From positions 3,968,001-4,032,000 of the forward strand of contig OZ251225.1 in assembly GCA_965240325.2 (NCBI GenBank): a stretch of DNA of 64,000 nucleotides, in the 5' to 3' direction. How positions within the stretch are numbered: the stretch's first letter is position 1; each line of letters opens with the position of its first letter. Below the pieces are notes generated by a model. That model was not told the origin of the DNA. It was given only the letters and a program-made list of their open reading frames with translations, and did no database searches. This document shows, one piece after another, positions 1 through 64,000 of the stretch. The translations under genes and the position numbers were made by a program. This DNA is from Rebecca billardiae RCC1528 (Eukaryota; Protista; Haptophyta).

Positions 1-1655
1 CGGGCTGCGCTGGGCCGCGCAGCGCCGCCGCGCTTTTATCAGCAGCATCGGCCCGCGGCCGCCGCGGTGGCTGGCCGCCTGACGGCCGGTGCTCGCAGGC
101 CGCAGCCCACGCATCCTCGTGGCAGTCTGCACGCAGAGGATGGCAGACCGGCTAACGGCGGCCTCGGCGGCCGCGAGCAGTCCCTTCATCTTCGGTTGAC
201 GGCGTGTCGGCGGCCAAGAGGTGGCACGGGCGGCCACGGTCGTGTCGACTCTGTGCCTCTGACGCCGCGCCTTTGTCGTCCCAGTCAGTGCCAGGCTGCC
301 GCCGTGGACGCCTTGGATGCCAATGCGGATGCCTTGACGAGCGCGTGCGGTCGTTGCGCCTGAAGTGTCTCTGACAGAGCTGATGGCTATGCCGGACGAA
401 TTTGCCGCCGCGGAGCCATCGGCAGTGCCTGACGCACCGCCATCGCCGCGCCGATGCGCATTCGCCGCGCCAGCGCCACGCAGTCCGGACTCCTGCGCCA
501 ACTCCCAGCTGCTGCTGTCCGTGCTCGGGAACACGGCGCAGCTGGACACACTCTGTGCGCACAGCCTTCTTGCGCGCTTACCAGCCAGAGTGAGTGGCAC
601 AGCACATGGCCAATTCGGGCGTGGCGTGCGTCTGAGGCGGCGCTGTGTGACATTGTGCTCGCTGTGAACGGCGCTGTCGACCACAGCGCAGGCGGCCACG
701 ATGCAACGAAGTGTGGCCGCGACGCGTGCGTACATTGTACTGCCGAAACTAGCGTACCTGCGCCAATATTCAAGTGACAATGCCCGCGTCTGACATGCTC
801 TTGGTCCCGCGAGCATGCTGTCCCCTTGTCTCAGCCTATGACTCAGATTGACTAGCACCGTTGTCTAATGGCATCGAGTAGGCTACAGGTAGCAAGGCGC
901 GCGCCGCGCTCGCGCGGCCGGCATGTGCGACGCGCCGCTGCCTCGCGCGGCTGGCGCATGCGAGGGCGCGGATCGCCCAGGGCGCAAGCGTGCGGGCGAG
1001 CTGCGACCGCACAGCTCCTCGCGCGAGCGCGGCGCGCGCTCTACCGACGCTTGGGCGCGCTCGAGTCGCTGGCACCTTCATGGGTCCAAAACGCGCGAGC
1101 GCCAGCTTGCGCGCGCGCTCGAGCTCGCCTTGGTCGGCGTGCGCGACCGACGCGCGCGGCTGGGCGGAGCGCATACACATGGTCCGCGCACAACACGACA
1201 GCAAATCATCGTCCGACTTCCTTGTGCCCGCCTGTGCGCGTTCGCGGTCGGCCGCAGCGGACAAACGTGCCGACGCGCAGTCGCGGGCCATTGGCGAGCG
1301 GCGTGAGCGGCGGAGAGGCGCGCAGCCAGCGGCGCGCGAAGGCACGGTGCCGGGGCGCACCCGCAGGACGCGTGCGCGGGCCGCGCAGACTCGAGCGACG
1401 CCCGCGGTGCGCGGCGAGCGACGCCCTCGGCGCGCGGCGACTGCAGCCTCCGCCCCCCCTACCCGAGGTGCGCGATCGGGTAGGGGACCCCTACCCGAGA
1501 CGCTTCTGGCTCCCCTACCCGTGCCTCGTCACCCACGGCCACGAGCGAATGTGGAAAGACGCGAACCCGCAAAGGATACATTGCGACAGCACTGGCACGG
1601 CCCGCCGACCCCCCCCGCCCGCCAGGGCACAGTTTGTATTCTTCGTCGTCATACG

Positions 1656-2726
1656 ATGGCGGCCGGATCCGCTGCATCAATGCCGCCCGCGACGATCATC
1701 TTTGCGATCTCGCTGCTCGCCGCAGCGCTCGACCCAGCCAGCGGCACGAGCGCGCACCACCTCCGGCGTACTGCTGTTCATCGCTCGCCAGCGGCGTGCG
1801 CCCGGCCAGCCCGGCCCGCGGCGCGTGCATTGCCCGCCCGCGCGCTTGGCGCCGTTCTCGGCCCGCGCGCGGCCGCGCCCGCGCGCCTGAGTGCCGGCCG
1901 GCGGCTCGGGCCGAGGATGCTCCTGGATGACGGCAGTGACATTGACATCGACGTTGTCGCCGCAGCAGAGGCCGCGGCCAAGCTCACGAGCTTCTCCTCG
2001 CCGCCGGGCGACGACGTGCTGCCGGGCGTGAGCGCGGCCGCCTTCCCGTGGGTGGCACTGGCCATCGCGCTGCCGACTGCGTTGGTGCTCCGCGCGGTGG
2101 CGTCGGATGCGCGCGCGGCGTCGTGGGACGTGATGCCCAAGCGCTACCTCATCCGCTGGAGCGCGCCCAGCGCCCGCCGGTACGAGCTGCCCACGGGCGG
2201 CAGCGAGCTGATGCGCGCGGGCCCGGACAACGGGCTTGCGCTCTCGTCCAAGGCGGAGTGCGTGGCGCTCGGCCGGCAGTTCGAGAAGAAGTTCACAGGG
2301 ATCACGTACCAGATCTACGAGGTGAAGGGTGGCGAGGGCGAGGAGGGCGGCGCGCCCTCGGCGCTGCGCATCGTCGGCTCGTACCCCAAGCCAGTCAACG
2401 CGGCGGGCACGTCCGTGCGCGCGTCCGCGGACGCGCAGCGCTCAGCGCGGGACCCCCTGGCGGAGGACTCGCTGGGAGACTCGTGGCGCGAGCTCTTCGA
2501 GTCGTACGCGAGCGAGATCGACGACGAGTGGGCGCGCTTCCGCGAGAGCCTCTTCGTCGTCGGCGGCTCGAGGCTGCAGGTCGTGCGCCCGGGCGAGGAG
2601 GACGACGGCGCGCCGGGCGAGGGCAGGGGCTCGGATGACTCGGACTCGGGCGCTGACGACGGCGATGACGACGACGGCGAGGAGGGCGGGGGCAAACCGA
2701 CGGTGGGCACGCCCGGCTCGGCATGA
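1656..2726 (+). CDS. Nuclear-encoded PsaD-like protein with signal peptide, one TM helix and acidic tail
   Basis: ATG 1656 (or 1680) is in frame with ORF 990..2726. Hydrophobic leader ATIIFAISLLAAAL; TM-like FPWVALAIALPTALVL (~2043-2095). 2139-2408 KRYLIRWSAPSARRYELPTGGSELMRAGPDNGLALSSKAECVALGRQFEKKF..YQIYEV..YPKPVN aligns to the PsaD core (KYAITW..FEMPTGGAAIM..NLL.LARKEQCLALG.QL..KF..Y.IYRV..PEKVN). Confidence 0.8.
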   Translation: MAAGSAASMPPATIIFAISLLAAALDPASGTSAHHLRRTAVHRSPAACARPARPAARALPARALGAVLGPRAAAPARLSAGRRLGPRMLLDDGSDIDIDVVAAAEAAAKLTSFSSPPGDDVLPGVSAAAFPWVALAIALPTALVLRAVASDARAASWDVMPKRYLIRWSAPSARRYELPTGGSELMRAGPDNGLALSSKAECVALGRQFEKKFTGITYQIYEVKGGEGEEGGAPSALRIVGSYPKPVNAAGTSVRASADAQRSARDPLAEDSLGDSWRELFESYASEIDDEWARFRESLFVVGGSRLQVVRPGEEDDGAPGEGRGSDDSDSGADDGDDDDGEEGGGKPTVGTPGSA

Positions 2727-3289
2727 GAGAGAGGCTTCGTCGGCTACGATGGATGACGACGAGAGCGCGTCTCATGCATGATCAACGCAGCGCAAGCGCG
2801 CCACCTGCTCGGCTCGGCTGGGGCAGCTGCTGACACTGCGCGCTCCGCCGCGCGCGGTGTGAGCGCTGGCACCCACTCGAGCTGCCGATGTGATGTCGGT
2901 GTGAGTGATGATGCCGTAGTCCACTGCGGCCTGCGGGGCCTGACGATGTCACAGATTCGGATAGCAGTGATGCTGCTGAGTCAGCACTCTCCGCGTCAGT
3001 TACGCGCCGCTGTCAGTAGTATAGTCAGCACCGTTATTCAGGCCGAACCGTGTCCGTTGACGGCTGCAAGTGGCAGGCGCCCCGCACATTAAGTAGCATA
3101 CATGCACTATGCAGCATCAATAATAACGCTCATCAGCATCCGCCGCAATATATTATTAATATATTTAAAGCGATGCGCGGCCTGACCGGTCGCTGCTCGA
3201 CTATATGCTGACAGTAATGATATACGGTACGGCCAGATTGATGGCGCGGGCGGTTAGACTGAGACCGTACTGAATCGCGGCCCTGCTAT

Positions 3290-3810
3290 GAATGGTGCCC
3301 GATCAGGGCGGCACGCCCACGTCAGGCACGTGCCTCTGGACGGGGCATTGAGCCGTGGCAAGGTCGCCAAATCGCGTGGCGTGGTCCCAGAGAAAGCTGC
3401 CACTACCCCTGACCAGCTTGCTAGCCAAGCCGGTCGTTGATCACCCCGCCGTTGACAGGCGCACACACGCCACGCGTAATCGTATCGGCCATGGCAGCCG
3501 TGTCGGACGGCGGTCGAACGACTACCGCGCAGCCAACACTTTGATCGTCAGACTCACGACTTGTGGGGTCAGACAGAACATTGATAGGTCTGCACCCTCG
3601 CCTGGCATGCCCAAGAGGTCAGCGCAGCCATCAGAAGGGTGATCCTGCCCGCTAGTACTACTTGCCCATCCTTCCCATGCGCAGCCTCACGCGCGCCGTG
3701 GACGGGCATTCACGCCCGCCGCATGGCTCCCTTTCCAAGTCCCCTCCACTTCATGTGGACGACTGGGCCCCGAGGGCTGCCGTAAGGCAAAGGGTGGTCG
3801 TAACGTAGTC
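3290..3810 (+). pseudogene. Degenerate region homologous to 19983-20815(-); possible Ulp1/C48 protease remnant
   Basis: Several clear DNA blocks are shared with the reverse complement of 19983-20815 (e.g. ggacggcggtcgaacgactaccgcgcagccaaca; cttcccatgcgcagcctcac; gggtggtcgtaacgt). Motif remnants: H*AV at 3346 and Q..CGV at 3549-3570. Confidence 0.45.
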
Positions 3811-3878
3811 CTTGCTCGTCCGGTCAGTCGGCGCAGGGCAACAAGCGCGCCAAGAGGCTGCGCAACGAGCTGGCCGGC

Positions 3879-5150
3879 ATGGTCAACCTGAAGAGCCGCA
3901 AGTGTGATCACGCTGGCTGCACCAAGCAGCCTTCGTTCGGCATGCCGGGCGACGCGCGCCCCAGCCGGTGCGCTGCGCACAAGCTGCCCGGCATGGTCGA
4001 CCTGGAGCACCGCAAGTGCGATCACGCTGGCTGCACCAAGCAGCCTGCGTTCGGCATGCCGGGCGACGCGCGCGCCAGCCGGTGCGCTGCGCACAAGCTG
4101 GCCGGCATGGTTGACGTGGTGAGCCGCAAGTGTGATCACACCGGCTGCACCACGCGGCCTTCGTTCGGCATGCCGGGCGACGCGCGCGCCAGCCGGTGCG
4201 CTACGCACATGCTGGCCGGCATGGTCGACGTGGGAAGCCGCAAATGTGATCACGCTGGCTGCACCAAGCAGCCTGCGTTCGGCATGCCGGGCGACGCGCG
4301 CGCCAGCCGGTGCGCTACGCACAAGCTCGCTGGCATGGTCGACCTGAAGAGCCGCCAGTGTGATCACGCTGGCTGCACCAAGTGCCCTTCATTCGGCATG
4401 CCGGGCGACGCGCGCGCCAGCCGGTGCGCTACGCACAAGCTCGCTGGCATGGTCGACCTGAAGAGCCGCCAGTGTGATCACGCTGGCTGCACCAAGTGCC
4501 CTTCATGCGGCATGCCGGGCGACGCGCGCGCCAGCCGGTGCGCTACCCACAAGCTCGCTGGCATGGTCGACCTGAAGAGCCGCCAGTGTGATCACGCCGG
4601 CTGCACCAAGCAGCCTGCGTTCGGCATGCCGGGCGACGCGCGCGCCAGCCGGTGCGCTACGCACAAGCTCGCTGGCATGGTCGACCTGAAGAGCCGCCAG
4701 TGTGATCACGCTGGCTGCACCAAGTGCCCTTCATTCGGCATGCCGGGCGACGCGCGCGCCAGCCGGTGCGCTACGCACAAGCTCGCTGGCATGGTCGACG
4801 TGAAGAGCCGCCAGTGTGATCACGCTGGCTGCACCAAGCAGCCTGCGTTCGGCATGCCAGGTGACGCGCGTCCCAGCCGGTGCGCTGCGCACAAGCTGGC
4901 CGGCATGAAGCGCCTTCGGAGTGGTGCGCACAAGCGCGGGCTGGAGCAAGACATGACGAGCACCAAACAAGTGAGCGCCGCCAAGCGACAGCGGAAGCGC
5001 ACTAGCAGCACAGCCAATGCTGCCTCGGACGTTGTGGCAGCGCGGCAGCCACGGGCGCAGCCGCCGCCGTTTCTGGTCACAGCAAGCGTCGTAACGACGC
5101 CGTCGCGTGTACGACCTGTGGTGATGGCCAGGCGGGTGCGCATGGCCTGA
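3879..5150 (+). CDS. EsV-1-7 cysteine-rich repeat protein, copy A (9 x 38 aa plus basic tail)
   Basis: 114-nt tandem units encode MVDxxxRxCDHxGCTxxPxFGMPGDARASRCAxHKLAG (C-x4-C-x16-C-x2-H). The tail contains KRQRKR. Confidence 0.9.
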   Translation: MVNLKSRKCDHAGCTKQPSFGMPGDARPSRCAAHKLPGMVDLEHRKCDHAGCTKQPAFGMPGDARASRCAAHKLAGMVDVVSRKCDHTGCTTRPSFGMPGDARASRCATHMLAGMVDVGSRKCDHAGCTKQPAFGMPGDARASRCATHKLAGMVDLKSRQCDHAGCTKCPSFGMPGDARASRCATHKLAGMVDLKSRQCDHAGCTKCPSCGMPGDARASRCATHKLAGMVDLKSRQCDHAGCTKQPAFGMPGDARASRCATHKLAGMVDLKSRQCDHAGCTKCPSFGMPGDARASRCATHKLAGMVDVKSRQCDHAGCTKQPAFGMPGDARPSRCAAHKLAGMKRLRSGAHKRGLEQDMTSTKQVSAAKRQRKRTSSTANAASDVVAARQPRAQPPPFLVTASVVTTPSRVRPVVMARRVRMA

Positions 5151-16846: not shown

Positions 16847-17047
16847 TATCGGTGGCTCGGGAGCGACGGGACTGCCCGACACCGTCGATATATATATCGT
16901 ATCACGACTGCTGATGATATCAATCAGCAGCAGCAATTGTAGCGCAGTAACTCTGCCGCTGACGATCCGGATGATCATCGCTCATTCGCTGCGTTTGGTG
17001 CGCCCCCCGAGCCTTTTGGCATGAACCGGTGCTGCTCGGGCCCGTAC

Positions 17048-18310
17048 TCACCCCGTAGGCCGTACCCGCCTGGCCATCACCACGGGTCGTGCACGCGACG
17101 GCGTCGTTACGACGCTGGCTGTGACCAGTGGCGGCAGCTGCGATCGCGGCCGCCGCGCTGCCACAACGTCCGAGGCAGCATTGGCTGTGCTGCTGGTGCG
17201 CTTCCGCTGTCGCTTGGCGGCGCTCACTTGTTTGGTGCTCGCCATGTCTTGCTCCAGCCCGCGCTTGTGCGCACCACTCCGAAGGCGCTTCATGCCGGCC
17301 AGCTTGTGCGTAGCGCACAGGCTGGCACGCGCGTCGCCGGGCATGCCGAACGCAGGCAGCTTGGTGCAGCCGGTGTGATCACACTTGCGGCTCACCACGT
17401 CGACCATGCCGGCCAGCTTGTGCGCAGCGCACCGGCTGGCCACGTCGCCCGGCATGCCGAACGAAGGGCACTTGGTGCAGCCGGTGTGATCACACTTGGA
17501 GCTCCTCACGTCCACCATGCCGGCCAGCTTGTGCGTAGCGCACCGGCTGGCCACGTCGCCCGGCATGCCGAACGAAGGCCGCGTGGTGCAGCCGGTGTGA
17601 TCACACTTGCGGCTCACCACGTCGACCATGCCGGCCAGCTTGTGCGTAGCGCACCGGCTGGCGCGCGCGTCGCCCGGCATGCCGAATGAGGGGCCATTGG
17701 TACAGCCGGCGTGATGACACTTGCGGTTCATCACGTCGACCATGCCGGCCAGCTTGTGCGTAGCGCACCGGCTGGCCACGTCGCCCGGCATGCCGAACGA
17801 AGGCCGCGTGGTGCAGCCGGTGTGATCACACTTGCGACACTTCAGGTTGACCATGCCAGCCAGCATGTGCACAGCACACCGGCTAGCGCGCTTGTCACCC
17901 GGCATGCCGAAGTGAGGCCGCGTGGTGCAGCCGGTGTGATCGCACTGGCGGCTCTTCAGGTCGACCATGCCGGCCAGCTTGTGCGCAGCGCACCGGCTGG
18001 CGCGCGCGTCGCCGGGCATGCCGAACGAAGGCTGCTTGGTGCAGCCCGCGCGATCACACTTGCGGCTCTTCACGTTGACCATGCCGGCCATTTTGTGCGT
18101 AGCGCACCGGCTGGCTCGCGCGTCGCCGGGCATGCCGAACGCAGGCAGCTTGGTGCAGCCGGTGTGATCACACTTGCGGCTCACCACGTCGACCATGCCG
18201 GCCAGCTTGTGCGTAGCGCACCGGCTGGCGCGCGCCTCGTCCGGCATGCCGAATGAAGGGGACTTGGTGCAGCCAGAGTGATCACACTTGCGGCTCTTCA
18301 GGTTGACCAT
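17048..18310 (-). CDS. EsV-1-7 cysteine-rich repeat protein, copy B (9 repeats, three of 37 aa)
   Basis: Same repeat and near-identical C-terminal tail as copy A. Confidence 0.9.
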   Translation of the reverse strand: MVNLKSRKCDHSGCTKSPSFGMPDEARASRCATHKLAGMVDVVSRKCDHTGCTKLPAFGMPGDARASRCATHKMAGMVNVKSRKCDRAGCTKQPSFGMPGDARASRCAAHKLAGMVDLKSRQCDHTGCTTRPHFGMPGDKRASRCAVHMLAGMVNLKCRKCDHTGCTTRPSFGMPGDVASRCATHKLAGMVDVMNRKCHHAGCTNGPSFGMPGDARASRCATHKLAGMVDVVSRKCDHTGCTTRPSFGMPGDVASRCATHKLAGMVDVRSSKCDHTGCTKCPSFGMPGDVASRCAAHKLAGMVDVVSRKCDHTGCTKLPAFGMPGDARASLCATHKLAGMKRLRSGAHKRGLEQDMASTKQVSAAKRQRKRTSSTANAASDVVAARRPRSQLPPLVTASVVTTPSRARPVVMARRVRPTG

Positions 18311-19866: not shown

Positions 19867-19982
19867 ATAATACTACCATTACAGTTTACTAAGAATAAGA
19901 GACGCACACAGCTCAGCCAGGCGAGATCGTTTACTCATTCTTATGATTTATAATAACGACTAAGAATAAGAGACGCACAGTA

Positions 19983-21300
19983 CGACGTTACGACCACCCT
20001 TTGCCGTTACGGCTTTACGGGGCCCAGTCGTCCAGATGAAGCGGTGGGGACCTCGGAAAGGAAGCCGTGGCGAGCGTGAATGCCCGTCCCACCGCGATCC
20101 AAGGCGCGTGTGGCACGTCTGGGACAGGGGGGCATGCCACACGCCGGTCGGCGTCGCCGTACGAGCATGTGGGCATGAGTGACAGCTTCCTTTCCGACTT
20201 TTCGACCACTCTCACGTCCACGTCCACGTCCTCATGCGACTGGCGCGCGTGTGAGGCTGCGCATGGGAAGAATGGGCAAGTACTAGTAGGGACTAGGATC
20301 ACCCTTATGACGGCCATGCCTGATGCCGACCTCTAGTTACGACGGTGCAGGCGGCAGTCCGAATGTTCCGTCTAAGGCTAAGCCCACACACCATGAGTCT
20401 GACGATCAATGTTGACTGCGCGGTAGTCGTGCGACCGCCGTCCCACACTGTTGCCGGCCGTGCGAACTACTGTGTGCAGCGTGTGCGCGCCTGTCAATCA
20501 CAATGGCGCCCTCGGCGATCATCGACCGACCGCTAGCGAGCTGAGTCCAGGACTCAGTAACAATAGGGGGGCCAAAGTGGCGCACTGTAGCGTTACTGAC
20601 GGCCACGCGCGCGGGTCCTAGCGAGTGTTTAGAGCTGATTTCTGGCTGGATCATTTGCCCTCTGGAGGGGTTACACTCACGTACTTAACCTGCTTGTCTG
20701 GGACCACAGCCTCGGACGCCACGCCATTAATTGGCGACCTCTCCACCGCTCAATGCCCGTCCAGACTCAGAGGCACGGACGTGCCGCACTACCTGGCCCT
20801 GGGCACCTGGCCCGACTCGGACTACTGGACGGGCTCCACGGCGCCATTTGCCTGGGGTGGCCCACCATCTGGGGTCCAGATGGTGGGGTTGAAATTCCCG
20901 CGTGTCCGTGTGCAGCCCCGTGGCGGACGGGGGGGTCGGCGGGCTGTGCCAGTGCTGTCGCAATGTTTCCTCTGCGGGTTCGCGTCTTTCCACATTCGCT
21001 CGTGGCCGTGGGTGACGGACAGTCCGACAGTCGGACCAGTGACACCTGAAGCTCTCCCACTCGGAGAACGTGTACACGTCCGTCAGCGCAGCGCGTGCAC
21101 ATCGGCATCAGCGAGGCCCACACCCACGAGGGAATGTGCAGCACGCGGGGCGGGGCGGGTAGCCCGTTGCTCCGCGCGAGCGCGGGTACGCGCTGTATGT
21201 GCCGCATCTCGACCGCGATGGCGTAATCGAGCGCCTCGCCGCCGACGAAGCCGCCAGAGTAGATCATGTGCATGTCCTCCTGCCGCCAGCCGAGAGCGGT
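19983..21300 (-). pseudogene. Degenerate ORF upstream of copy B; possible Ulp1/C48 peptidase remnant
   Basis: WRQEDMHMIYSGGFVGGEALDYAIAVEM...RVLHIPSWVWASL; VPLSLDGH*AV (20776-20744); RQ...CGL (20404-20380). DNA homology to 1528-1625 and 3290-3810. Confidence 0.45.
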
Positions 21301-37567: not shown

Positions 37568-38247
37568 GATGCAATGCGAAGCGGTACGGAACTGAACTGC
37601 CCTGGCGAGGAAGGAATCCCGAGCCGTCTAAGACTGTGCTGGAGGCACTGATAGCCATCAACGGGTAAGTCGGGAAAGTGGCCATGATGGGCGCGTGTAT
37701 GATCCCGACTCGATAATGAATGTCGGTGTAGTGTGACGGTTGGTGATCCGGGTGTGTACGCACGGGAGAGCGAGTCCGGGTAACGTTGGATCTTGACACC
37801 CCCACCCAATCGCAGCGGTGGTCGTACGAAACCTGGTCGACCCGAAGGGACTGGGTGTAGACGTGCGACCATCGTGTGATTGTAGATGATGCGATGTTGC
37901 CGTATGGGATGCAATGCGAAGCGGTACGGAACTGAACTGCCCTGGCGAGGAAGGAATCCCGAGCCGTCTAAGACTGTGCTGGAGGCACTGATAGCCATCA
38001 ACGGGTAAGTCGGGAAAGTGGCCATGATGGGCGCGTGTATGATCCCGACTCGATAATGAATGTCGGTGTAGTGTGACGGTTGGTGATCCGGGTGTGTACG
38101 CACGGGAGAGCGAGTCCGGGTAACGTTGGATCTTGACACCCCCACCCAATCGCAGCGGTGGTCGTACGAAACCTGGTCGACCCGAAGGGACTGGGTGTAG
38201 ACGTGCGACCATCGTGTGATTGTAGATGATGCGATGTTGCCGTATGG
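37568..38247. repeat. 340-bp tandem duplication spanning the PPT / 3' LTR junction
   Basis: 37568-37907 = 37908-38247; breakpoints at gatgca(a)tgcg microhomology. Confidence 0.92.
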
Positions 38248-38404
38248 GATGCATGCGTCGGAGCGGTTGTCCGAGTAGACGATGTAGAAGTCGGGCGAGT
38301 CGGTGCCGGCAGCGTCTCCGTTCAGAAGAGACAACGTGAGGTCAATGTGCGTCCGACGAGCGGCGACCGATGTAGCACTGGGACTTCGTGTATGCGGCGA
38401 GGCC

Positions 38405-41400
38405 TTACATGCCCAGGATCTGAGCACGAAGTTTGAGGAAGGCGGCCGGGCCGAGCGGCTTGGTCATGATGTCGGCCGGGTTCTCGGTGCCGGGGATCAA
38501 GAAGAGCTTGAAGGTGCCGGCTCGGGCGTGCTGACGGTTCCAGTGGTACTGGACGTCGATGTGCTTGGTGCGGTTGTGGTACTTCTCGTTGTCCGTGAGG
38601 TCCACCACCGCCTTGTTGTCCTCGAAGAGCTTGGTCGGCGCGAGCTGCGGGTAGCCGAGGTCGGTGAGCAGCTTGCGCATGAAGATGATCTCCTTGCCGG
38701 CGGAGGTGACGGCCATGTACTCAGCTTCGGTCGAGCTCAGAGCCGTCGTGCGCTGCTTCTCGCGGCGGCCGCTCACCGTCGAGCCGCAGAGGTGCATCAC
38801 GTAGCCGGTGACAGACTTGCGCTCGTCGTGGAGGTCGTTGGCGTAGTCGGCGTCCACGTACGCGACGAGCGTGACGTCCGAGCCCGAGCGGAAGAAGAGG
38901 CCGTGGTTCGGCGTGCCGGCGAGGTAGCGGATGACGCGCTTGGCAGCCTCGAGGTGCTTCTTGCCCGGCTTGGACATGAAGTGGGTGAGCGTGCCGACGG
39001 CGTAGGCGATGTCCGGGCGAAACTGCGTGATGTGGATGAGCGAGCCGACCACGGAGCGGAAGAACGTCGTCGTCTCCGCGTCGAGCGCGTCTGACTCGGA
39101 GCACGGGCCGAGCTTGAGGCCCTCGGTCATCGGCGTGTCGGACGTGTTGCAGTTCATGAAGCCCGTCTTCTCGAGGAGCTCGAGGATGTTCTTGGTGACG
39201 GTCACCATGATGCCGTCCTTGGAGCGCGTGAGCGTGGCCGACAGGTAGCCGTCGATGTCGGCCGTGATGGTCATCTTGTACGAGGATGTGATCTTCGAGA
39301 TGAAGTTGTCGCAGGCGGTCGGGTCGTCGCTGTCGTCGAGGATGAGCATGTCGTCCACGTAGATGCACACGGCGATGATGCCCGACTGCGTGTTGAGGAC
39401 ATAGAGGCACGGGTCGGCCTGGCTCTGCGCGAACCCGTACTCCTTCATCCAGTCGTCGATCATGAGACGCCAGTTGCGGCCGGACTGCTTGAGACCGTAG
39501 AGGCTCTTGAGGAGGCGCAGCACGACGTCGCCCTTCGTCTTCGGCTTGTACCCGAGCGGCAGCTCGAGGTAGATCTCGTAGTCGATCGGCGCGTTGAGGT
39601 ACGCCGTCGTGAAGTCGCCGTGGAAGAGGCGGCGCTGCTTGGCCGCGGCGATGGCGATGATCATCTTGAGGGTCTCGTAGCGGACGACCGAGGAGAAGGT
39701 CTCGTCGTAGTCGATGCCCTCGATCTGCGTGAAGCCCTTGCCCACGACGCGGGCCTTGAACCGCTTGATGTTGCCCTTCTTGTCGCGCTTGATGTTGAAC
39801 ACGGGCGCCGCCTTCAGCGTGCGCATCCCCGGCTTGCGCGGCACCTCCACCCACGTGTCGTTGGCCAGGATGGAGGCGTACTCGGCATCGAGAGCGGCGG
39901 CGAACTGCGTCGCATGCGGGCCGTTGAGTGCTTGCACCGCCGTCGGCGTGTCCGAGAGTCCGATGGCGAGCAGGAGCGCGTAGATGCGCGGCAGCTTGGA
40001 GTAAGTCGGCGACGCGACCGAGTTGACGTGTGCGCGCGCGCGCGTGCGAGATGAGGGCGGGTCGTCGTCGTTGAGCGCGTTGCCGACATCGAGGGAGTCC
40101 TCGGCGCCGGCGGCGTCGTCGTTAGCGTCTCCGACGTAGGCGTGCGGTGCGTCCCCCACCCGCTCAGCGTGTCCGAATGCGCCGGCGCCATCGCGGCGCC
40201 GGACGGCGCCGTGGGAACTTCCCCCATTACCCACATCGGCAGCATGGAGGTCGAGCGGCGGCGACGTCGGCGGCAGCTGCGGCGCGGCGGCGAGCGGGTC
40301 GCGCGCGATGTGAGCGGCGTCGGGGTGGTCGACGTAGAGCGTGTCCTCGTCGAAGCGCACGTGGTGCGAGATGATGAACATGTCCGGGACGATCTGGCCG
40401 TCGCCGGGCACGCGTACGATGATCGCCTTCGTGTAGCGCGTGCGGTTCTTGGGCGGGACGTTCACCATGTGGCCGTCGTCGCCGTGGCCGACGTAGACGC
40501 CCATGACGGCGCGCGGGTCGAGCTTCTTGAAGTGCGTGTTCGGCGGCACGACGTAGGCGACGCAGCCGAAGACACGCAGCTGAGCGAGATCTGGCGGGAA
40601 GCCGCGCAGCAGCTCGAACGGCGTCTTGTCGAACGTCACCGGCGTGGCGATGCGGCGGATGATGTACGCGGCGTGGCGCAGCGCGTCCTTGGCGTAGGCG
40701 TCGATGCGCAGCTTGGAGTGGAACAGGATCGAGCGCGCCGCGTTGAAGAGCGTCTGGATGAAGCGCTCGGCGATCGGGTTGTGCTGCGGCGTGTCGGGCG
40801 GCGTGACCTGGTTGGGGGCGATGCCGTGCGCGCGGCAGATGCCCTCCCAGTCGGTCGAGTTGAGCTCGGGGGCGCCGTCGACGCGGAAGCGGCTGACGGT
40901 GTGGCCGTAGACCGACATGTCGTCGATGAAGCGTCGCATCGCCTCCGGTGCGTCCGAGCGGCGGTCGAGGAAGTAGATGAAGCCGGCCCGGGTGTAGTCG
41001 TCGACAAACACGATCACGTAGAACTTGGCAAAATCGTCCGGGTTCACGATGAACTTGCCGTCGACGTAGCCGGCGACGTCGACATGGACGAGCACGAACG
41101 CCTTCTCCGAGCGGGGCGACGTGGACGTGAACGAGTTGCGCTTCATCTTGGCGAGCGCGCACGAGCAGTCCGACTTGAGGTTGCGCGCGCCGAGGTGCTT
41201 GGATGCGGCGAGCGTGCGGTTGACGGCAGCTGCGTGAGCGTGGCCGAGCCGGAGGTGAGCGACGCGCGAGAGCTCGTCGGTGTCCTTGAACTCGACGCAG
41301 CACTCGTCGCAGAACGTGTCGTCGTCCGGCGCGAGGTCGGCGGTCTGCGAGGCCTGGTCCATGGTCACGATGACGAGAGCGCCGTCGGACGTGGGCGGCT

Positions 41401-44161
41401 GCGCCGGCGGCGGCGGCAGCGAGGACTGGAGCGGGGCGGGCGGCACGTGGAGGCCGGACGCGGCGATGGTGGGCGACGGCGAGTCGTCGTCCGGGATGAA
41501 GACGGCGCATGCGAGATCGCGGCCGTGCAGAGGAACGAGCTTGTCGCCGTACAGCAGGTACCGGCCGCCCTGCGCGTGGATCGGGGTGGCGCCGGACATG
41601 AAGGTGGTCGGCGCCGCGAGCGAGATGAACGAGATGCCGAGGCGGGTCAGCCAAGTGTCGCTCATGTAGAAGCCCGGGACGTCTGGAGAGAGCGGGACGT
41701 CCATGAGCGGCAGCGTGATGAGGTCGCCGTCGATCGAGCGCATGCCGAGGGCGAACGAGGCCGAGGTGTTGATCTTGATCCGCGTGCCGTTCGCCGCGCG
41801 CGCCTCCGAGAACTGGCGGAAGGACTTGGCGGCAAACCGAGAGAACGCGGTCGAGGCGATGGTGGTGTCCGCGCCGGTGTCGATCATGATCGAGATGCTC
41901 GCCTGGGCGATGTCGCCTGTGAACGGCGTGCCGATGGCGAAGGAGATCGTCGAGTGCACGTTCTCAATCTCCTCCGGATCGGCGAGCAACGGCTGCTGGA
42001 TGCAGGTCGGGTTGATCGGGTCAAACGAGCGGGAGACGCCGCAGATGATGGGCGGGCCGGTGCGGGCGCAGCAGGTGACCGCGGTGAGGATCGAGATGAT
42101 GGCGAGGACGGCGAGCGCGACGAGGAAGAGGAAGGCACCGTGCGAGGACTTGAAGAGCGCGCGGAGCCGACCCTCGTGCTTGAACCGCGGCGGCGGCGGC
42201 TCGTACCGGACGATCAGGTCATCGATGTAGGCGCCGGCGTCACCGAAAGACCGTGCGCGATGGATCTCGGCCTCGGCCGCGGCGGCTGCGGCGAGGAACT
42301 CGTACGGGCTGAGCGTGAGCGGCTCTCCGGCGAGCTGGCCGAGGTGGCCGAGCGGGTAGGTGTAGTTGCCCGCGGTGGAGACGTCGTCCAGGCTGGGGCA
42401 GTCGTCGGACGTGTCCGAGGCCGCGTCCGAAGCCGAGGTCGTGGACGAGGGAGTGCACGGGACAAGGTCCGGCAGCTCATCGTCCGTCTCCGAGGCCGAG
42501 TCGGAGGCGGAGTCGTCGCGGTCGTCCGGGGGGTTGGCGAGACGGAACGGCTTGAGGTGGAACGGCTCGTAGGAGGCGGGCTTGCGGATGGACTGGCGCA
42601 ACGCCATGATGAGCACATTCTGGCCGCGCTCGAGCTCGGCCGCCGTCGCGAGCTGGATCGGGGAGCCGGCCTCAGACGCCGGCGGCGACGGCGAGTCGAC
42701 CTGCGTCGGCGGCGACGGCGGGCCGAAGGGCGGCGGCGGCGAGCTGGCCTGCGTCGGCGGGTCGAACAGTGGCGGCGGCGGCGAGTAGAGCGCCGGCTGC
42801 TGGTCGATGAGCGACAGCGCCGGCTGCTGCGAGTCGGCGGGCGGCGGCAGCGGCGGCGTGTTGGTGAGCGCCGGCTGCGAGTTGGAGTGCGCCCGCGACA
42901 GCTGCGGGTCGGCGGGCGGCGGCGAGTTGGCGGGCGGCGGCGGCGGCGGCGGCGCGCCGGCGGGCTGCCGCGACGACGGCGTGAGGACGAGCGTCGGCAG
43001 CGAGTTGAAGCGCGCCCGCGACAGCGGCGAGTCGGCGGGCGGCTGCGAGTTGGCGGGCGGTGGCGGTGGCGCGTCGGCGTCGGTCGCCGCCGGCTGCGAG
43101 TTGGGGCCTGACGCCGAGCCCGAGATGGAGATGGCGTTGAGCGTCGGCGTGCCGTCCTGGATGAGCCGCACGCGCGTCGTGGTCGCCGACGGCTTCGCCC
43201 GCTGCGGCGTCGGCTGCGGCTGCGACTGCGAGGGCGCGGAGGGCACGCGCTGGAGCTTGTTGGACTTGTGAGTCGGGCGGCGCGCGCCGCCGGAGCGAGC
43301 GTCGGCTGCGGGCGTCGCGCCCGAGGAGCGCGAGGTGGACGTGTGGGGGCGGTTCGGGCAGTCGCGGTTCCAGTGCATGCCGCCGCAGTACTTGCACGGG
43401 GTAGGAGGCATGGATGCGCCGGGCTGGCCCTTGGAGGTGAGCGCGTTGACGGCCTGGCGGTTGGGGTTCGTGCCGTTGGCGGCGGCGGCGACGCGGTCGA
43501 GATCGTGCACGCGCTCGATGAGATCCTCCACCGAGATGGGCTGGTCGTTCATCGTCGCGATCACCGAGCTGACGAAGGACGGGTTGCGGCCGTAGAGGTT
43601 CACGAGGATCACGACGAGCGTGAAGATGTCGTCCTTGATCTCGACGCCGCGCAGCTCCGTGGCGTTGGACATCACGCGGGCAGCAAAGGCGTGGAAGCTC
43701 TCGCTCGGCGACAGTTTGATCGAGAGCAGGGCGTACAGCTTGGCGACGAGCGAGGAGGGGCGGGAGCTGTTGCAGCGCACGTTGAGCGCGTTGACGAGAT
43801 GAGACAGCTCGAGCCCGAGACCCGAGTGCTGCAACTGCGCGATGATCGGGTCGAGGATGCGAGGAGCGACCGCCTTGAGAAGCAACTGCACGATGAAAGC
43901 CTGCGTGCGCAGCTGCTTGGCCTGGATGGTGGCGGCGGCGGTGGACGGGGGGCAGACGATGGGCTTGTCCGCGCCGGTATCGTCCTTGCCCGGCTCGAGG
44001 GGCGAGGACGGGTTGGAGAACGCGAGCGCGACGTCCATGTCCGGCTTCGACGTGACCATGACCACAAGAACGGAGATGGCCGTGCGGAGGTCCTGCGGCT
44101 TGAGGACGAGAGCTCGCGGCGGGAGCTGGTCACGCATGTCGCCACCCGGCGGCTCCGCCAT
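38405..44161 (-). CDS. Copia gag-pol polyprotein (1918 aa, uninterrupted)
   Basis: Zn knuckle CKYCGGMHWNRDC; protease IDTGA; HLRLGH; integrase VHVD/VDDYTR/RVDGA/NPIAER; RT YGLKQS and YVDDM; RNase H DADYA, SSTEAEY, KHIDV and ADIMTKPL. Order PR-IN-RT-RH. Confidence 0.97.
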   Translation of the reverse strand: MAEPPGGDMRDQLPPRALVLKPQDLRTAISVLVVMVTSKPDMDVALAFSNPSSPLEPGKDDTGADKPIVCPPSTAAATIQAKQLRTQAFIVQLLLKAVAPRILDPIIAQLQHSGLGLELSHLVNALNVRCNSSRPSSLVAKLYALLSIKLSPSESFHAFAARVMSNATELRGVEIKDDIFTLVVILVNLYGRNPSFVSSVIATMNDQPISVEDLIERVHDLDRVAAAANGTNPNRQAVNALTSKGQPGASMPPTPCKYCGGMHWNRDCPNRPHTSTSRSSGATPAADARSGGARRPTHKSNKLQRVPSAPSQSQPQPTPQRAKPSATTTRVRLIQDGTPTLNAISISGSASGPNSQPAATDADAPPPPPANSQPPADSPLSRARFNSLPTLVLTPSSRQPAGAPPPPPPPANSPPPADPQLSRAHSNSQPALTNTPPLPPPADSQQPALSLIDQQPALYSPPPPLFDPPTQASSPPPPFGPPSPPTQVDSPSPPASEAGSPIQLATAAELERGQNVLIMALRQSIRKPASYEPFHLKPFRLANPPDDRDDSASDSASETDDELPDLVPCTPSSTTSASDAASDTSDDCPSLDDVSTAGNYTYPLGHLGQLAGEPLTLSPYEFLAAAAAAEAEIHRARSFGDAGAYIDDLIVRYEPPPPRFKHEGRLRALFKSSHGAFLFLVALAVLAIISILTAVTCCARTGPPIICGVSRSFDPINPTCIQQPLLADPEEIENVHSTISFAIGTPFTGDIAQASISIMIDTGADTTIASTAFSRFAAKSFRQFSEARAANGTRIKINTSASFALGMRSIDGDLITLPLMDVPLSPDVPGFYMSDTWLTRLGISFISLAAPTTFMSGATPIHAQGGRYLLYGDKLVPLHGRDLACAVFIPDDDSPSPTIAASGLHVPPAPLQSSLPPPPAQPPTSDGALVIVTMDQASQTADLAPDDDTFCDECCVEFKDTDELSRVAHLRLGHAHAAAVNRTLAASKHLGARNLKSDCSCALAKMKRNSFTSTSPRSEKAFVLVHVDVAGYVDGKFIVNPDDFAKFYVIVFVDDYTRAGFIYFLDRRSDAPEAMRRFIDDMSVYGHTVSRFRVDGAPELNSTDWEGICRAHGIAPNQVTPPDTPQHNPIAERFIQTLFNAARSILFHSKLRIDAYAKDALRHAAYIIRRIATPVTFDKTPFELLRGFPPDLAQLRVFGCVAYVVPPNTHFKKLDPRAVMGVYVGHGDDGHMVNVPPKNRTRYTKAIIVRVPGDGQIVPDMFIISHHVRFDEDTLYVDHPDAAHIARDPLAAAPQLPPTSPPLDLHAADVGNGGSSHGAVRRRDGAGAFGHAERVGDAPHAYVGDANDDAAGAEDSLDVGNALNDDDPPSSRTRARAHVNSVASPTYSKLPRIYALLLAIGLSDTPTAVQALNGPHATQFAAALDAEYASILANDTWVEVPRKPGMRTLKAAPVFNIKRDKKGNIKRFKARVVGKGFTQIEGIDYDETFSSVVRYETLKMIIAIAAAKQRRLFHGDFTTAYLNAPIDYEIYLELPLGYKPKTKGDVVLRLLKSLYGLKQSGRNWRLMIDDWMKEYGFAQSQADPCLYVLNTQSGIIAVCIYVDDMLILDDSDDPTACDNFISKITSSYKMTITADIDGYLSATLTRSKDGIMVTVTKNILELLEKTGFMNCNTSDTPMTEGLKLGPCSESDALDAETTTFFRSVVGSLIHITQFRPDIAYAVGTLTHFMSKPGKKHLEAAKRVIRYLAGTPNHGLFFRSGSDVTLVAYVDADYANDLHDERKSVTGYVMHLCGSTVSGRREKQRTTALSSTEAEYMAVTSAGKEIIFMRKLLTDLGYPQLAPTKLFEDNKAVVDLTDNEKYHNRTKHIDVQYHWNRQHARAGTFKLFLIPGTENPADIMTKPLGPAAFLKLRAQILGM

Positions 44162-51020: not shown

Positions 51021-51159
<139 letters not shown>

Positions 51160-55079: not shown

Positions 55080-56018
55080 TCAGGCCATGCGCACCCGCCT
55101 GGCCATCACCACAGGTCGTACACGCGACGGCGTCGTTACGACGCTGGCTGTGACCAGAAACGGCGGCAGCTGCGCCCGTGGCTGCCGCGCTGCCACACCG
55201 CCCGAGGCAGCATTGGCTGTGCTGCTGGTGCGCTTCCGCTGTCGCTTGGCGACGCTCACTTGTTCGATGCTCGTCATGTCTTGCTCCAGCCCGCGCTTGT
55301 GCGCACCACGGCTGCGAAGGCTCTTCATGCCGGCCAGCTTGTGCGCAGCGCACCGGCTGGGACGCGCATCGCCGGGCATGCCGAACGCAGGCCGCGTGGT
55401 GCAGCCGGTGTGATCGCACGTGGGGTTCCTCAGGTCGACCATGCCGGCCAGCTTGTGCGTAGCGCACCGGCTGGCGCGCGCATCGCCGGGCATGCCGAAT
55501 GATGGGCACTTGGTGCAGCCGGCGTGATCACACTTGCGGCTCACCACGTCGACCATGCCGGCCAGCTTGTGCGCAGCGCACCGGCTGGCGCGCGCGTCGC
55601 CCGGCATGCCGAACGCAGGCCGCGTGGTGCAGCCGGTGTGATCACACTTGCGGCTCACCACGTCAACCATGCCGGCCAGCTTGTGCGCAGCGCACCGGCT
55701 GGCGCGCGCGTCGCCCGGCATGCCGAACGAAGGCTGCTTGGTGCAGCCCGCGTGATCGCACTTGCGGTGCTCCAGGTCGACCATGCCGGCCAGCTTGTGC
55801 GCAGCGCACCGGCTGGCGCGCGCGTCGCCGGGCATGCCGAACGCAGGCTGCTTGGTGCAGCCAGCGTGATCACACTGGCGGCGGCTCTTCAGGTCGACCA
55901 TGCCAGCCAGCTTGTGCGTAGCGCACCGGCTGGGGCGCGCGTCGCCCGGCATGCCGAATGAATGCCGCGTGGTGCAGCCAGTGTGATCACACTGATGGCG
56001 GCTCTTCAGGTCGACCAT
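55080..56018 (-). CDS. EsV-1-7 cysteine-rich repeat protein, copy C (6 repeats)
   Basis: Same repeat and tail. Its 3' flank (~54930-55070) is homologous to 6846-7130. Confidence 0.9.
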   Translation of the reverse strand: MVDLKSRHQCDHTGCTTRHSFGMPGDARPSRCATHKLAGMVDLKSRRQCDHAGCTKQPAFGMPGDARASRCAAHKLAGMVDLEHRKCDHAGCTKQPSFGMPGDARASRCAAHKLAGMVDVVSRKCDHTGCTTRPAFGMPGDARASRCAAHKLAGMVDVVSRKCDHAGCTKCPSFGMPGDARASRCATHKLAGMVDLRNPTCDHTGCTTRPAFGMPGDARPSRCAAHKLAGMKSLRSRGAHKRGLEQDMTSIEQVSVAKRQRKRTSSTANAASGGVAARQPRAQLPPFLVTASVVTTPSRVRPVVMARRVRMA

Positions 56019-63302: not shown

Positions 63303-64000
63303 CAAGGGTGTCCAGGGTCCGCAACAGCCAGTGCGCAGCGCGGCAGAGGCTGTGACAGAGGCAGGTCGCCGCTCGCCAGTGGCACTCGCCCGCCCGCCGC
63401 CCTGCACGGCGGCGGGGCCGCTCGCGCCGTGCGCTCCTGCGGCCGTCGGATCGGGCTGCGTAGGCGGCGCGCGGCTTGGGCCGTCGGAGAGCCACCCAGC
63501 GCCCCTCTCTGCGCCGCGCGCCTTCCTCGTCCTCGCCTCCTCCGCGCCTTGGAGCAGCACGCACACGCGCGGCGTCGCACAAAGGCAGCCCAGGCGCTCG
63601 CGTGCAAGCGTGCGCGCGCGCAGCGCGACGGGCTCGACTCGGGGCTCGCGCCGCTGCGGGGGCATGCAGCACCATCACATGCGCGCGCGACGCCACCTCG
63701 AGCCTGCGCGTTTGACCGTCAGTGCACGCTGATGCACGTTACAAAATGGTCTGACTTGGCATCATCACACGTGCGACGGAAGCTTCCACAACGGGCCTTG
63801 AGTGCGTCGACGCGATCGATGCGGAGATGGTCATGCTTGCGTGCGCTTCTCTTGTGGTCTCCACGCTTGCTGAGAAGCGCCGCGTACGTAGCTGTCATCG
63901 TGTCTTGCCTAAGAAGTCGTCCTGACGCATGGCAGGTTCTGGTCAGATTGGGCCTACTTCAACACGAGGACGTGTGAGCATTTGGCACGTGACGGTCACA
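63303..64000. mobile_element. Second copy of the P-like foldback (opposite orientation, runs off the window)
   Basis: Starts CAAGGGTGTCCAGGG; near-identical to the reverse complement of 49021-49718. Confidence 0.88.

What the first reader, a model, noticed from the sequence alone, without database searches (positions are those of the whole stretch)
3879..5150. EsV-1-7 zinc-repeat arrays with TALE/PRDM9-like variable residues: candidate programmable binding code
Seen: three dispersed intact genes (3879-5150, 17048-18310, 55080-56018) are built from near-identical 114-nt units and share a tail with an NLS-like KRQRKR. Across 24 repeats C9, C14, C31, H34 and the scaffold are almost invariant. 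Variation concentrates at residues 16-17: A = KQ KQ TR KQ KC KC KQ KC KQ; B = KS KL KQ TR TR NG TR KC KL; C = TR KQ KQ TR KC TR. It also occurs at residue 19 (S/A/H) and residues 4-6 (LKS, LEH, VVS, VGS, VKS, LKC, VMN, VRS, LRN). The variant codons differ by several nucleotides (aagcag, acgcgg, aagtgc, aagctg, aatggc) inside otherwise homogenised DNA. Known: the EsV-1-7 repeat occurs in Ectocarpus virus and the brown algal IMM protein; I know of no ligand or code for it. Inference: a modular nucleic-acid (or protein) reader with one specificity per repeat, perhaps aimed at TEs or viruses.
Basis: partly seen in the sequence, partly recalled or inferred. Interest (0 to 1): 0.9.

Follow-up and report, generated by a model that had tools for sequence, protein, structure and literature searches.

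The report
Algal zinc-repeat arrays with unit-specific residues
Three intact algal genes encode strings of 6-9 small zinc-binding repeats that differ mainly at a few fixed positions; comparison with relatives suggests, but does not prove, that these positions set what each repeat recognises, probably on DNA.

Summary
There are three intact ORFs, at 3879-5150(+), 17048-18310(-) and 55080-56018(-). Each has 9, 9 or 6 tandem 37-39-aa EsV-1-7 units (Pfam PF19114, E down to 1e-125) and a shared basic tail containing KRQRKR.

- **Where the variation sits:** the 28 scaffold codons are homogenised (5.6% nucleotide divergence). Ten hot codons (3-6, 8, 12, 16, 17, 19, 33) diverge by 27.7%. Position 17 has piN/piS of 3.4.
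- **Independent support:** position 17 and then position 6 are also the top hotspots in five unrelated arrays. In two ortholog pairs about 75% identical, positions 4-6, 8, 16, 17 and 19 are almost frozen (5/84 differences against 110/324 elsewhere, P=5e-8), although they differ between units. That is the pattern expected of specificity determinants.
- **Indirect support for DNA as the ligand:** at least 89 of the 120 closest homologs, mostly from giant-virus-like contigs, fuse the array to a C-terminal domain that is probably a Vsr/DUF559/DUF2726-type nuclease. A published Ectocarpus transposase carries an EsV-1-7 domain.
- **What is missing:** the window genes lack the nuclease domain. No binding code, fold match or transcription evidence was obtained.

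First-stage readers of this scan noted the same idea at eight or more other places in this genome.

Verdict: new members of a known family, and a testable lead for modular recognition.

The parts
3879..5150 (+). Gene A: intact 423-aa ORF with 9 EsV-1-7 units and a basic tail
   Evidence: ORF. Pfam PF19114 E 1.3e-125 with 9 stretches. GC3 is 0.81, similar to the PsaD-like ORF (0.815) and below the two GC-richest ORFs in the window (0.93-0.94).
3879..4904 (+). Gene A array: 9 units of 38 aa. Di-residues at positions 16-17 are KQ KQ TR KQ KC KC KQ KC KQ
4905..5147 (+). Gene A tail: 81 aa, 18 K+R against 3 D+E, no Pfam family
   Evidence: Tail dN/dS between paralogs is 0.27-0.63.
4983..5000 (+). 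KRQRKR, an NLS-like basic motif in gene A
   Evidence: Similar KR-rich motifs occur in the tails of eukaryote-type homologs. Nuclear import itself was not tested.
17048..18310 (-). Gene B: intact 420-aa ORF. The 9-unit array lies at 17294-18310 (KS KL KQ TR TR NG TR KC KL) and the tail at 17051-17293, with KRQRKR at 17198-17215
   Evidence: (E 5.7e-122)
55080..56018 (-). Gene C: intact 312-aa ORF. The 6-unit array lies at 55329-56018 (TR KQ KQ TR KC TR) and the tail at 55083-55328, with KRQRKR at 55230-55247
   Evidence: (E 8.8e-84)
3848..3878 (+). Conserved stretch of about 31 nt upstream of the ATG, a remnant partial unit (..RLRNELAG). It is shared by A, B and C, but is out of frame in B and preceded by in-frame stops in A and C
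   Evidence: It supports the shared ATG as the start codon.
1527..3812 (+). Patchy upstream sequence of gene A that is collinear with window 19978-21017 upstream of gene B (75-94% identity in patches). It is absent upstream of gene C
   Evidence: A and B derive from a duplication larger than the CDS. B carries an extra 1.6 kb or so next to the gene.

Best explanation
[quoted passage not shown] Each 38-aa unit most likely folds as a small single-zinc module with ligands C9, C14, C31 and H34. The predicted layout is a strand, a C-x4-C knuckle, a strand, a loop, then C-x2-H at a short helical turn, which is treble-clef-like. Units are joined by a conserved HKLAGMVD linker.

**Proposed mechanism.** The array is a basic, nuclear, modular nucleic-acid binder, most likely of DNA. 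Each unit contributes its own contact surface from the two segments flanking the knuckle, chiefly positions 5, 6, 8 and 17, with 4, 16 and 19.

**How the arrays evolve.** Unequal crossing-over and gene conversion homogenise the scaffold and reshuffle units within and between paralogs. Selection keeps the contact residues diverse.

**Relation to the viral family.** The window genes are nuclease-less relatives of a very large, mostly giant-virus family in which the same array is fused to a probable Vsr/DUF559/DUF2726-type PD-(D/E)XK endonuclease. There the array would aim the nuclease.

**Shown versus inferred.**
- Shown: family membership, intactness, site-specific diversity, and the ortholog conservation pattern.
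- Inferred: zinc binding, fold, DNA as the ligand, one specificity per unit, and nuclear location.
For: - **Family and architecture:**
- **Genes under selection:** scaffold codons have piN/piS of 0.19 and tails 0.27-0.63. GC3 of 0.81-0.84 lies within the range of other ORFs in the window.
- **Hot versus cold codons:** 27.7% against 5.6% nucleotide divergence, whichever units are paired.
- **Excess nonsynonymous diversity:** piN/piS is 3.4 at position 17 and 2.6 at position 5. For the set {5,6,8,17}, chosen from independent ortholog data, it is 2.12 (bootstrap 1.73-2.65).
- **Replication:** in five unrelated arrays for which DNA was available, position 17 has the best mean rank and position 6 the second. 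Across 62 arrays, within-array entropy is highest at position 17.
- **Ortholog test:** in P0024 (Coccomyxa elongata) against P0050 (Botryococcus) and in P0072 against P0092, the di-residue strings are identical. Positions 4, 5, 6, 8, 16, 17 and 19 differ 5/84 times against 110/324 elsewhere (Fisher 4.7e-8), yet they differ between units 63% of the time.
- **DNA context:**
  - At least 89 of 120 homologs carry a C-terminal domain with invariant RPD, ExDExxH (usually ExDExQH), R and RxNPD.
  - That domain family has 7707 representative clusters. The 149 new representatives listed carry 0-11 EsV-like motifs. Of the 114 scanned against Pfam, 87 match EsV_1_7_cys, a few have C2H2 fingers instead, and 3 hit DUF2726.
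  - Named Atlas neighbours are 49/100 DUF559, plus Vsr and PvuRts1I-like.
  - An AFDB hit with an EsV array is named as a DUF2726 protein.
  - Vsr, DUF559 and DUF2726 form one PD-(D/E)XK group that includes a homing endonuclease (PMC3424549).
  - The TcMar-2_Ec32 transposase has an N-terminal EsV-1-7 domain (PMC12477816).
- **Charge and tail motif:** arrays have 53-54 K+R against 24-27 D+E in A and B (36 against 19 in C), and the tail carries KRQRKR.
- **Structure:** the AF2 3-unit model has pLDDT 83.9, with strand bridges at 2-3/20-21. The single-unit model has strand bridges at 20-21/28-30.
Against: - **No direct evidence:** there is none for zinc, DNA or RNA binding, nuclear location or expression. 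No RNA run was listed.
- **Fold unresolved:** Foldseek and VIA-align found no significant PDB match. Only weak treble-clef-type hits appeared (GATA3, ArfGAP, LIM, RING). The single-unit model has pLDDT of only 73.
- **Nuclease unconfirmed:** HMMER against PDB and Pfam found nothing significant. hhalign against a DUF559 profile aligned 29 columns with probability 15%. The window genes lack that domain altogether, so their function may have diverged.
- **Statistical limits:** the piN/piS values come from 24 related units that recombine, so the bootstrap interval is optimistic. A minimum-mutation count that I did by hand (not a tool result) puts position 17 alone at only about P 0.02-0.05 before multiple-test correction.
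- **Thin replication:** the ortholog test rests on two pairs.
- **Other caveats:** between viral relatives the di-residue strings turn over completely, which fits rapid retargeting but also fits weak constraint. By simple hairpin geometry the hot positions lie on both faces of the hairpin.
Confidence: 0.55

Rival explanations
1. The arrays are protein-binding or other non-nucleic-acid scaffolds, like LIM or RING-type zinc modules. The variable hairpin residues would tune partner choice, not base recognition.
For: The only structural hits, all weak, include the protein-binding treble-clef modules LIM and RING. IMM, the one genetically studied family member, is known only as a developmental regulator with no biochemical activity reported. 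The ortholog and diversity signatures show functional specificity but do not say what the ligand is.
Against: In relatives the array is fused to a probable endonuclease, and in Ectocarpus to a transposase. A few proteins with the same C-terminal domain hit C2H2 fingers, but I did not check whether they lack EsV units. The arrays carry a strong net positive charge and the tail has an NLS-like motif.
Confidence: 0.2
2. There is no recognition function in the variation. A few old unit types are shuffled by unequal crossing-over and short conversion tracts, and exposed hairpin residues are simply the least constrained.
For: - Whole-unit piN/piS is 0.58.
- Units show no positional orthology, and clear shuffling is seen (A2=C3, A3~C4).
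- T12 is linked to T16-R17, as expected for hitch-hiking.
- Across old arrays, variation is spread over most non-ligand positions.
- Positions 12 and 33 drift freely between orthologs.
Against: - Positions 5, 6, 8 and 17 are almost invariant between orthologs 25% diverged, yet differ between units 80-87% of the time.
- Nonsynonymous diversity at these sites is about twice the synonymous diversity.
- The same hotspots recur in independent AT-rich arrays.
- Homogenisation removes scaffold differences but not these.
Confidence: 0.15
3. The genes are decaying relics of integrated giant-virus array-nuclease genes or of a mobile element, with no present host function.
For: The closest relatives are overwhelmingly from Nucleocytoviricota-like clusters. 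The window genes lack the C-terminal domain. Gene C sits in a lower-GC stretch beside a possible gag-like ORF, and a copia element is nearby. An earlier scan note reports a CRESS Rep island 24 kb away.
Against: - All three copies keep intact ORFs with the same start, scaffold and tail.
- Scaffold piN/piS is 0.19 and tail dN/dS is below 1.
- GC3 is 0.81-0.84, against 0.30-0.41 overall GC for the AT-rich homologs L001-L003.
- Flanks are not shared by all copies and no terminal repeats were seen.
Confidence: 0.1

Closest known systems
EsV-1-7 cysteine-rich repeat family (Pfam PF19114; Ectocarpus virus EsV-1 gene 7; Ectocarpus IMMEDIATE UPRIGHT)
   Same: The C-x4-C-x16-C-x2-H unit, the 38-aa period, and tandem arrays with no other Pfam domain, as reported for the Ectocarpus proteins. 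The AFDB structural neighbours are EsV-1-7 proteins.
   Different: The host is a GC-rich alga rather than a brown alga. The units are unusually similar to each other, which exposes the hot positions. The shared basic tail with KRQRKR is not described for IMM. The literature I could read gives no ligand or code for the family.
Giant-virus proteins combining an EsV-1-7 array with a C-terminal domain (probable Vsr/DUF559/DUF2726-type PD-(D/E)XK nuclease)
   Same: The same repeat unit, linker and hotspot positions. These are the closest sequence relatives, at 30-59% identity.
   Different: The window genes have no trace of the 160-200-aa C-terminal domain. They end in a low-complexity basic tail, as other eukaryote-encoded homologs do.
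C2H2 zinc-finger arrays that evolve fast (PRDM9, KRAB-ZFPs)
   Same: They work alike on paper. Both are tandem single-zinc modules with a conserved linker and a scaffold homogenised by concerted evolution. In both, nonsynonymous diversity concentrates at a few positions, and per-finger residues are conserved in old orthologs.
   Different: The ligand pattern and spacing differ (CCCH, 38 aa). The predicted structure is mostly strand and coil, not beta-beta-alpha. The window proteins give no Pfam zf-C2H2 hit and have no KRAB or SET domain. DNA binding is not shown.
TALE repeats (Xanthomonas)
   Same: Near-identical tandem repeats, a repeat-variable di-residue idea, and an NLS.
   Different: TALE repeats are 33-35-aa helical hairpins without metal, and their variation is confined to residues 12/13. 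Here the variation spans two segments (3-8 and 16-19) around a zinc knuckle, and no one-unit-one-base rule is known.
Treble-clef zinc fingers (GATA, ArfGAP, LIM, RING)
   Same: A knuckle supplies two ligands, a beta-hairpin follows, and the last two ligands sit at the start of a helical turn. The C-x16/17-C spacing is like GATA and ArfGAP. These are the only structural hits, and they are weak.

Membership tests
EsV-1-7 cysteine-rich repeat family (PF19114) | Match to the Pfam model above its gathering score | tested here: met
   409, 398 and 276 bits against a cut-off of 25, with 9, 9 and 6 stretches
EsV-1-7 cysteine-rich repeat family (PF19114) | C-x4-C-x16-C-x2-H motif repeated in tandem with a period of about 38 aa | tested here: met
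   C9, C14, C31 and H34 are invariant in 24 of 24 units. Homologs have the same period.
EsV-1-7 cysteine-rich repeat family (PF19114) | Zinc coordination by the four conserved ligands | not testable with these tools
   AF2 is run without metal. It needs ICP-MS or a structure.
Viral EsV-1-7 array plus Vsr/DUF559/DUF2726-like nuclease proteins | C-terminal domain with the RPD ... ExDExxH ... RxNPD motifs | tested here: not met
   The window tail has no BLAST link to the 93-member C-domain cluster and no motif. The tail has no Pfam hit.
Viral EsV-1-7 array plus Vsr/DUF559/DUF2726-like nuclease proteins | The C-terminal domain of the relatives is a PD-(D/E)XK nuclease of the Vsr/DUF559/DUF2726 group | tested here: inconclusive
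   For: Atlas gives 49/100 DUF559 neighbours at score 0.85; Pfam DUF2726 hits 3 of 114 members, best E 7e-4; Hjc at 0.017 and a PHROG homing endonuclease at 0.006. Against: the hhalign probability is 15% and there is no PDB sequence hit.
C2H2 zinc-finger arrays (PRDM9/KZFP type) | C-x2-4-C-x12-H-x3-5-H units with a beta-beta-alpha fold | tested here: not met
   The ligand pattern is CCCH with different spacing. There is no zf-C2H2 hit even at E up to 10. The model is strand and coil.
C2H2 zinc-finger arrays (PRDM9/KZFP type) | Homogenised scaffold with excess nonsynonymous diversity at the contact positions | tested here: met
   Cold codons diverge 5.6% against 27.7% for hot codons. piN/piS is 2.1 at {5,6,8,17}. 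This is a resemblance in behaviour, not membership.
TALE repeats | 33-35-aa metal-free helical repeats with variation confined to residues 12/13 | tested here: not met
   Units are 38 aa with Cys/His ligands. Ten positions vary, in two blocks. There are no helices of 4 or more residues.
TALE repeats | One repeat reads one base | not testable with these tools
   Needs binding assays.
Treble-clef zinc fingers | Knuckle, beta-hairpin and helix N-terminus supply the ligands, with a significant structural match | tested here: inconclusive

The most novel reading that the evidence does not exclude
EsV-1-7 arrays are a third natural, decipherable modular DNA-recognition system, alongside C2H2 fingers and TALEs. 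Each 38-aa zinc unit would read a short DNA element through residues at positions 5, 6, 8 and 17 or so. Giant viruses would use the arrays to aim a Vsr/DUF559-like homing-type nuclease at rapidly changing targets. Algae would have domesticated nuclease-less, nuclear copies, such as these three genes, as diversifying regulators or genome-defence readers.
Probability: 0.25. Interest if true: 0.9.

Novelty: new member of a known kind. Interest (0 to 1): 0.6.

Why it matters
The EsV-1-7 domain is one of the largest expanded gene families in brown algae and is abundant in giant viruses. Its only genetically studied member, IMM, controls development. Yet the papers I could read still describe it only as a possible new zinc finger, with no ligand.

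Arrays as young as these three separate scaffold from functional positions cleanly. Together with the ortholog test and the probable nuclease fusions, they point to specific residues (5, 6, 8, 17) and a specific ligand class (DNA) that can be tested directly.

If a per-unit code exists, it would explain the family's expansions. It would also give a handle on giant-virus and host genome conflicts, and offer a new compact scaffold for programmable DNA binding. If no code exists, the family remains an ordinary, if large, repeat family.

Tried and rejected
- **PDB sequence search:** gene A gave no hit.
- **Structural searches:** Foldseek against PDB and two VIA-align wide searches, on the 3-unit and 1-unit models, gave nothing significant.
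- **Transposon carriage:** rejected. Homology among all three copies stops at the CDS plus or minus a few tens of nt. Only A and B share patchy upstream sequence. No terminal repeats were seen.
Pfam found nothing in the two long ORFs there.
- **Upstream exon:** considered. In-frame stops (A, C) or a 2-nt insertion (B) just before the shared ATG argue for that ATG as the start.
- **Paralogs from the same genome:** the window's proteins are not in the protein collection, so they could not be fetched.
- **Sequencing runs:**
  - No RNA run was listed.
  - One DNA run holds only short fragmentary contigs. Their multi-allelic differences at 4116-4122 fall on unit positions 4-6, but this is mapping of paralogs, not independent proof.
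- **DNA for homolog arrays:** missing for four of the nine looked up.
- **Nuclease domain:**
  - HMMER against PDB, Pfam and PHROGs gave only weak hits.
  - hhalign against YcjD alone and against a DUF559 profile was inconclusive.
- **Limited di-residue alphabet:** rejected as stated. 122 different di-residues occur in 753 units, although R and Q dominate position 17 and K and T dominate position 16.
- **Macaisne et al. 2017:** not held in the library.
Full report
**1. Observation**

The window holds three intact ORFs: A at 3879-5150(+), B at 17048-18310(-) and C at 55080-56018(-). Tandem Repeats Finder reports period-114 arrays at all three places, with 9.1, 9.1 and 6.1 copies and 92, 85 and 88% matches. 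Translation and splitting at the recurring MV[DN][LV] gives 24 units of 37-39 aa, followed by an 81-82-aa tail shared by all three genes.

C9, C14, C31 and H34 are invariant. All three proteins match Pfam EsV_1_7_cys far above threshold, with E values of 1e-125, 6e-122 and 9e-84. No further units occur elsewhere in the window.

**2. Where the variation is, and whether it is more than relaxed constraint**

Amino-acid entropy peaks at position 17 (2.2 bits) and position 5 (2.0 bits). Positions 8, 12, 19, 33, 16, 4 and 6 follow. Whole-unit piN/piS is 0.58 and synonymous diversity is 0.17, so the DNA is not literally homogenised.

The 28 non-hot codons are nevertheless 5.6% divergent whichever units are compared: collinear A/B 5.8%, A4-9/C 4.6%, all pairs 5.6%. 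The ten hot codons are 27.7% divergent. The scaffold therefore evolves in concert across units and paralogs, and the hot codons escape that process.

- Per-site piN over global piS is 3.4 at position 17 and 2.6 at position 5, and 1.1-1.9 at positions 4, 6, 8, 12, 16, 19, 26 and 33.
- Pooled over the 29 positions outside the variable set, the ratio is 0.19.
- Positions 3-8 (12 variants) and positions 12/16/17 (7 variants) recombine almost freely, giving 20 haplotypes in 24 units. T12 is linked to T16-R17.

The hot sites were chosen from the same data, so I looked for independent tests.

**3. Independent tests in relatives**

A search with gene A found 293 relatives, with the best at 59% identity. 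None came from the window's own genome. Their period is also 38 aa, with 4-10 units. In 62 arrays (344 units), within-array entropy is highest at position 17, then 33, 6 and 5. The Spearman correlation with the window profile is 0.54.

For five arrays I could fetch DNA (L001-L005). Their overall GC ranges from 0.30 to 0.61, and none is closely related to the window genes. Position 17 has the best mean rank of piN/piS and position 6 the second.

The most telling result comes from two ortholog pairs about 75% identical. One pair is P0024, named Coccomyxa elongata, against P0050, a Botryococcus model. The other is P0072 against P0092.

- Their di-residue strings are identical (KH KY KQ KQ NR KC, and KQ KQ KQ KV KR KN).
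- Positions 4, 5, 6, 8, 16, 17 and 19 differ in 5 of 84 comparisons, against 110 of 324 elsewhere (Fisher 4.7e-8).
- The same positions differ between units of one protein 63% of the time, and positions 5, 6, 8 and 17 differ 80-87% of the time.
- Positions 10-12, 15, 22-26, 33 and 36-37 drift freely.

Sites that differ between units but are frozen between orthologs are the classical signature of specificity determinants. Using the set {5,6,8,17} defined from this independent test, the window gives piN/piS of 2.12, with a bootstrap over units of 1.73-2.65. That interval is optimistic, because the units are related. Among viral relatives whose C-terminal domains are 60-65% identical, the di-residue strings are completely different. 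That fits rapid retargeting, but it also fits weak constraint.

**4. Structure**

An AlphaFold2 model of three units, built with an 80-row alignment, has pLDDT 83.9 and pTM 0.54. It is mostly coil, with bridges between residues 2-3 and 20-21. A one-unit model has pLDDT 73 and pairs 20-21 with 28-30.

The order is strand, C-x4-C knuckle, strand, loop, strand, then C-x2-H at a helical turn. That is the treble-clef plan, and this classification is my inference. Foldseek and two VIA-align searches found nothing significant. The weak top hits (GATA3, ArfGAP, LIM, RecR, RING) are all zinc modules of that general kind. AFDB neighbours are EsV-1-7 proteins with high rmsd over three units, suggesting beads on a string.

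With the bridge register i+j=23, positions 4/19, 6/17 and 8/15 would be cross-strand neighbours on one face. Positions 5 and 16 would lie on the other face. I could not obtain coordinates to check exposure.

**5. What the ligand might be**

At least 89 of the 120 best homologs carry a conserved domain after the array. Its invariant residues are D, RPD, ExDExxH (Q nearly invariant before the H), R, RxNPD and R. The domain family is very large, with 7707 representative clusters at E<=0.001. The domain is at or near the C-terminus in nearly all listed representatives, behind 0-11 EsV-like motifs.

Of 114 representatives, 87 have EsV_1_7_cys. A few have C2H2-type fingers instead, and 3 hit Pfam DUF2726. 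A language-model neighbour search restricted to named clusters returned DUF559 for 49 of 100 hits, plus Vsr and PvuRts1I-like endonucleases. These scored 0.85, which is only a lead.

- An AFDB protein with an EsV array is named as a DUF2726 protein.
- Steczkiewicz et al. place Vsr, DUF559 and DUF2726 in one PD-(D/E)XK group that includes a group I intron homing endonuclease (PMC3424549).
- Against this, profile-profile comparison with a DUF559 alignment built from E. coli YcjD relatives aligned only the hhhhExDGGQH core, with probability 15%.
- HMMER found nothing significant in PDB or Pfam.

I rate the nuclease assignment as probable but unconfirmed. [quoted passage not shown] An array of variable length in front of a nuclease or a transposase is what a DNA-targeting module looks like.

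The window genes lack the nuclease domain. Like other eukaryote-encoded homologs, they end in a low-complexity tail with a KR-rich motif. Their arrays carry about +3 net charge per unit, and their tails have 17-19 K+R against 3 D+E.

**6. Are the genes real and native?**

All three keep the same start, scaffold and tail.

- Scaffold piN/piS is 0.19.
- Tail dN/dS is 0.27-0.63, at dS of 0.06-0.15.
- GC3 is 0.81-0.84, within the range of other ORFs in the window and unlike the AT-rich homologs L001-L003.

A and B stem from a duplication larger than the CDS, with decayed upstream patches. C shares no flanks with them. No RNA run was listed, so expression is untested. The one DNA run found holds only short fragments.

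**7. What is known**

[quoted passage not shown] It is hugely expanded in brown algae, probably of giant-virus origin, and present in the developmental regulator IMM. No ligand is reported, and Ectocarpus members have no other Pfam domain. I found no description of position-specific hotspots, of the ortholog pattern, or of the nuclease fusion. The founding paper (Macaisne et al. 2017) is not held in the library, so I cannot exclude that it mentions some of this.

**8. Verdict**

The genes are new members of a known family. The TALE-like framing of a single di-residue is too narrow, and the proposed targets are speculation. First-stage readers of this scan raised the same idea at eight or more other places in this genome, so this window is one instance of a genome-wide family.

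Noticed in passing
homologs P0001-P0269 (not in the window); loci L001-L005: Most close homologs fuse the EsV-1-7 array to a conserved C-terminal domain with the motifs RPD, ExDExxH and RxNPD. The domain family is very large (7707 representative clusters) and mostly from Nucleocytoviricota-like sequences. It is probably a Vsr/DUF559/DUF2726-type PD-(D/E)XK nuclease. I did not find this architecture described in the papers searched.
   Followed up: partly
window 38405-44161 (-): A 1918-aa ORF with RVT_2, integrase core and retroviral SH3-like domains, that is, a copia-type LTR retrotransposon. A 340-bp tandem duplication at 37568-38257 (99% identical) lies beside it.
   Followed up: partly
window 44570-45419 and 47757-48611; 49021-49718 and 63303-64000: Two pairs of long inverted repeats, at 99% and 98.9% identity over about 850 and 700 bp. 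Their nature is not determined.
   Followed up: no
window 51553-54252 (+): An 899-aa ORF in the lower-GC stretch (0.57-0.60) beside gene C. It has no Pfam hit. Its Atlas neighbours are unnamed clusters and zf-CCHC or gag-like retrotransposon proteins, which is only a weak lead.
   Followed up: partly
window 990-2726 (+): An ORF with a PsaD match (E 1.6e-10) upstream of gene A. A 101-bp piece at 1527-1627 is 94% identical to 20918-21017 upstream of gene B.
   Followed up: partly
window 51022-51155: A perfect (AG)67 microsatellite.
   Followed up: no
window 3687-4367 (-), 17021-17689 (+), 17711-18256 (+): Long antisense ORFs run through the arrays. They are a by-product of the GC-rich repeat, not evidence of genes.
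   Followed up: no
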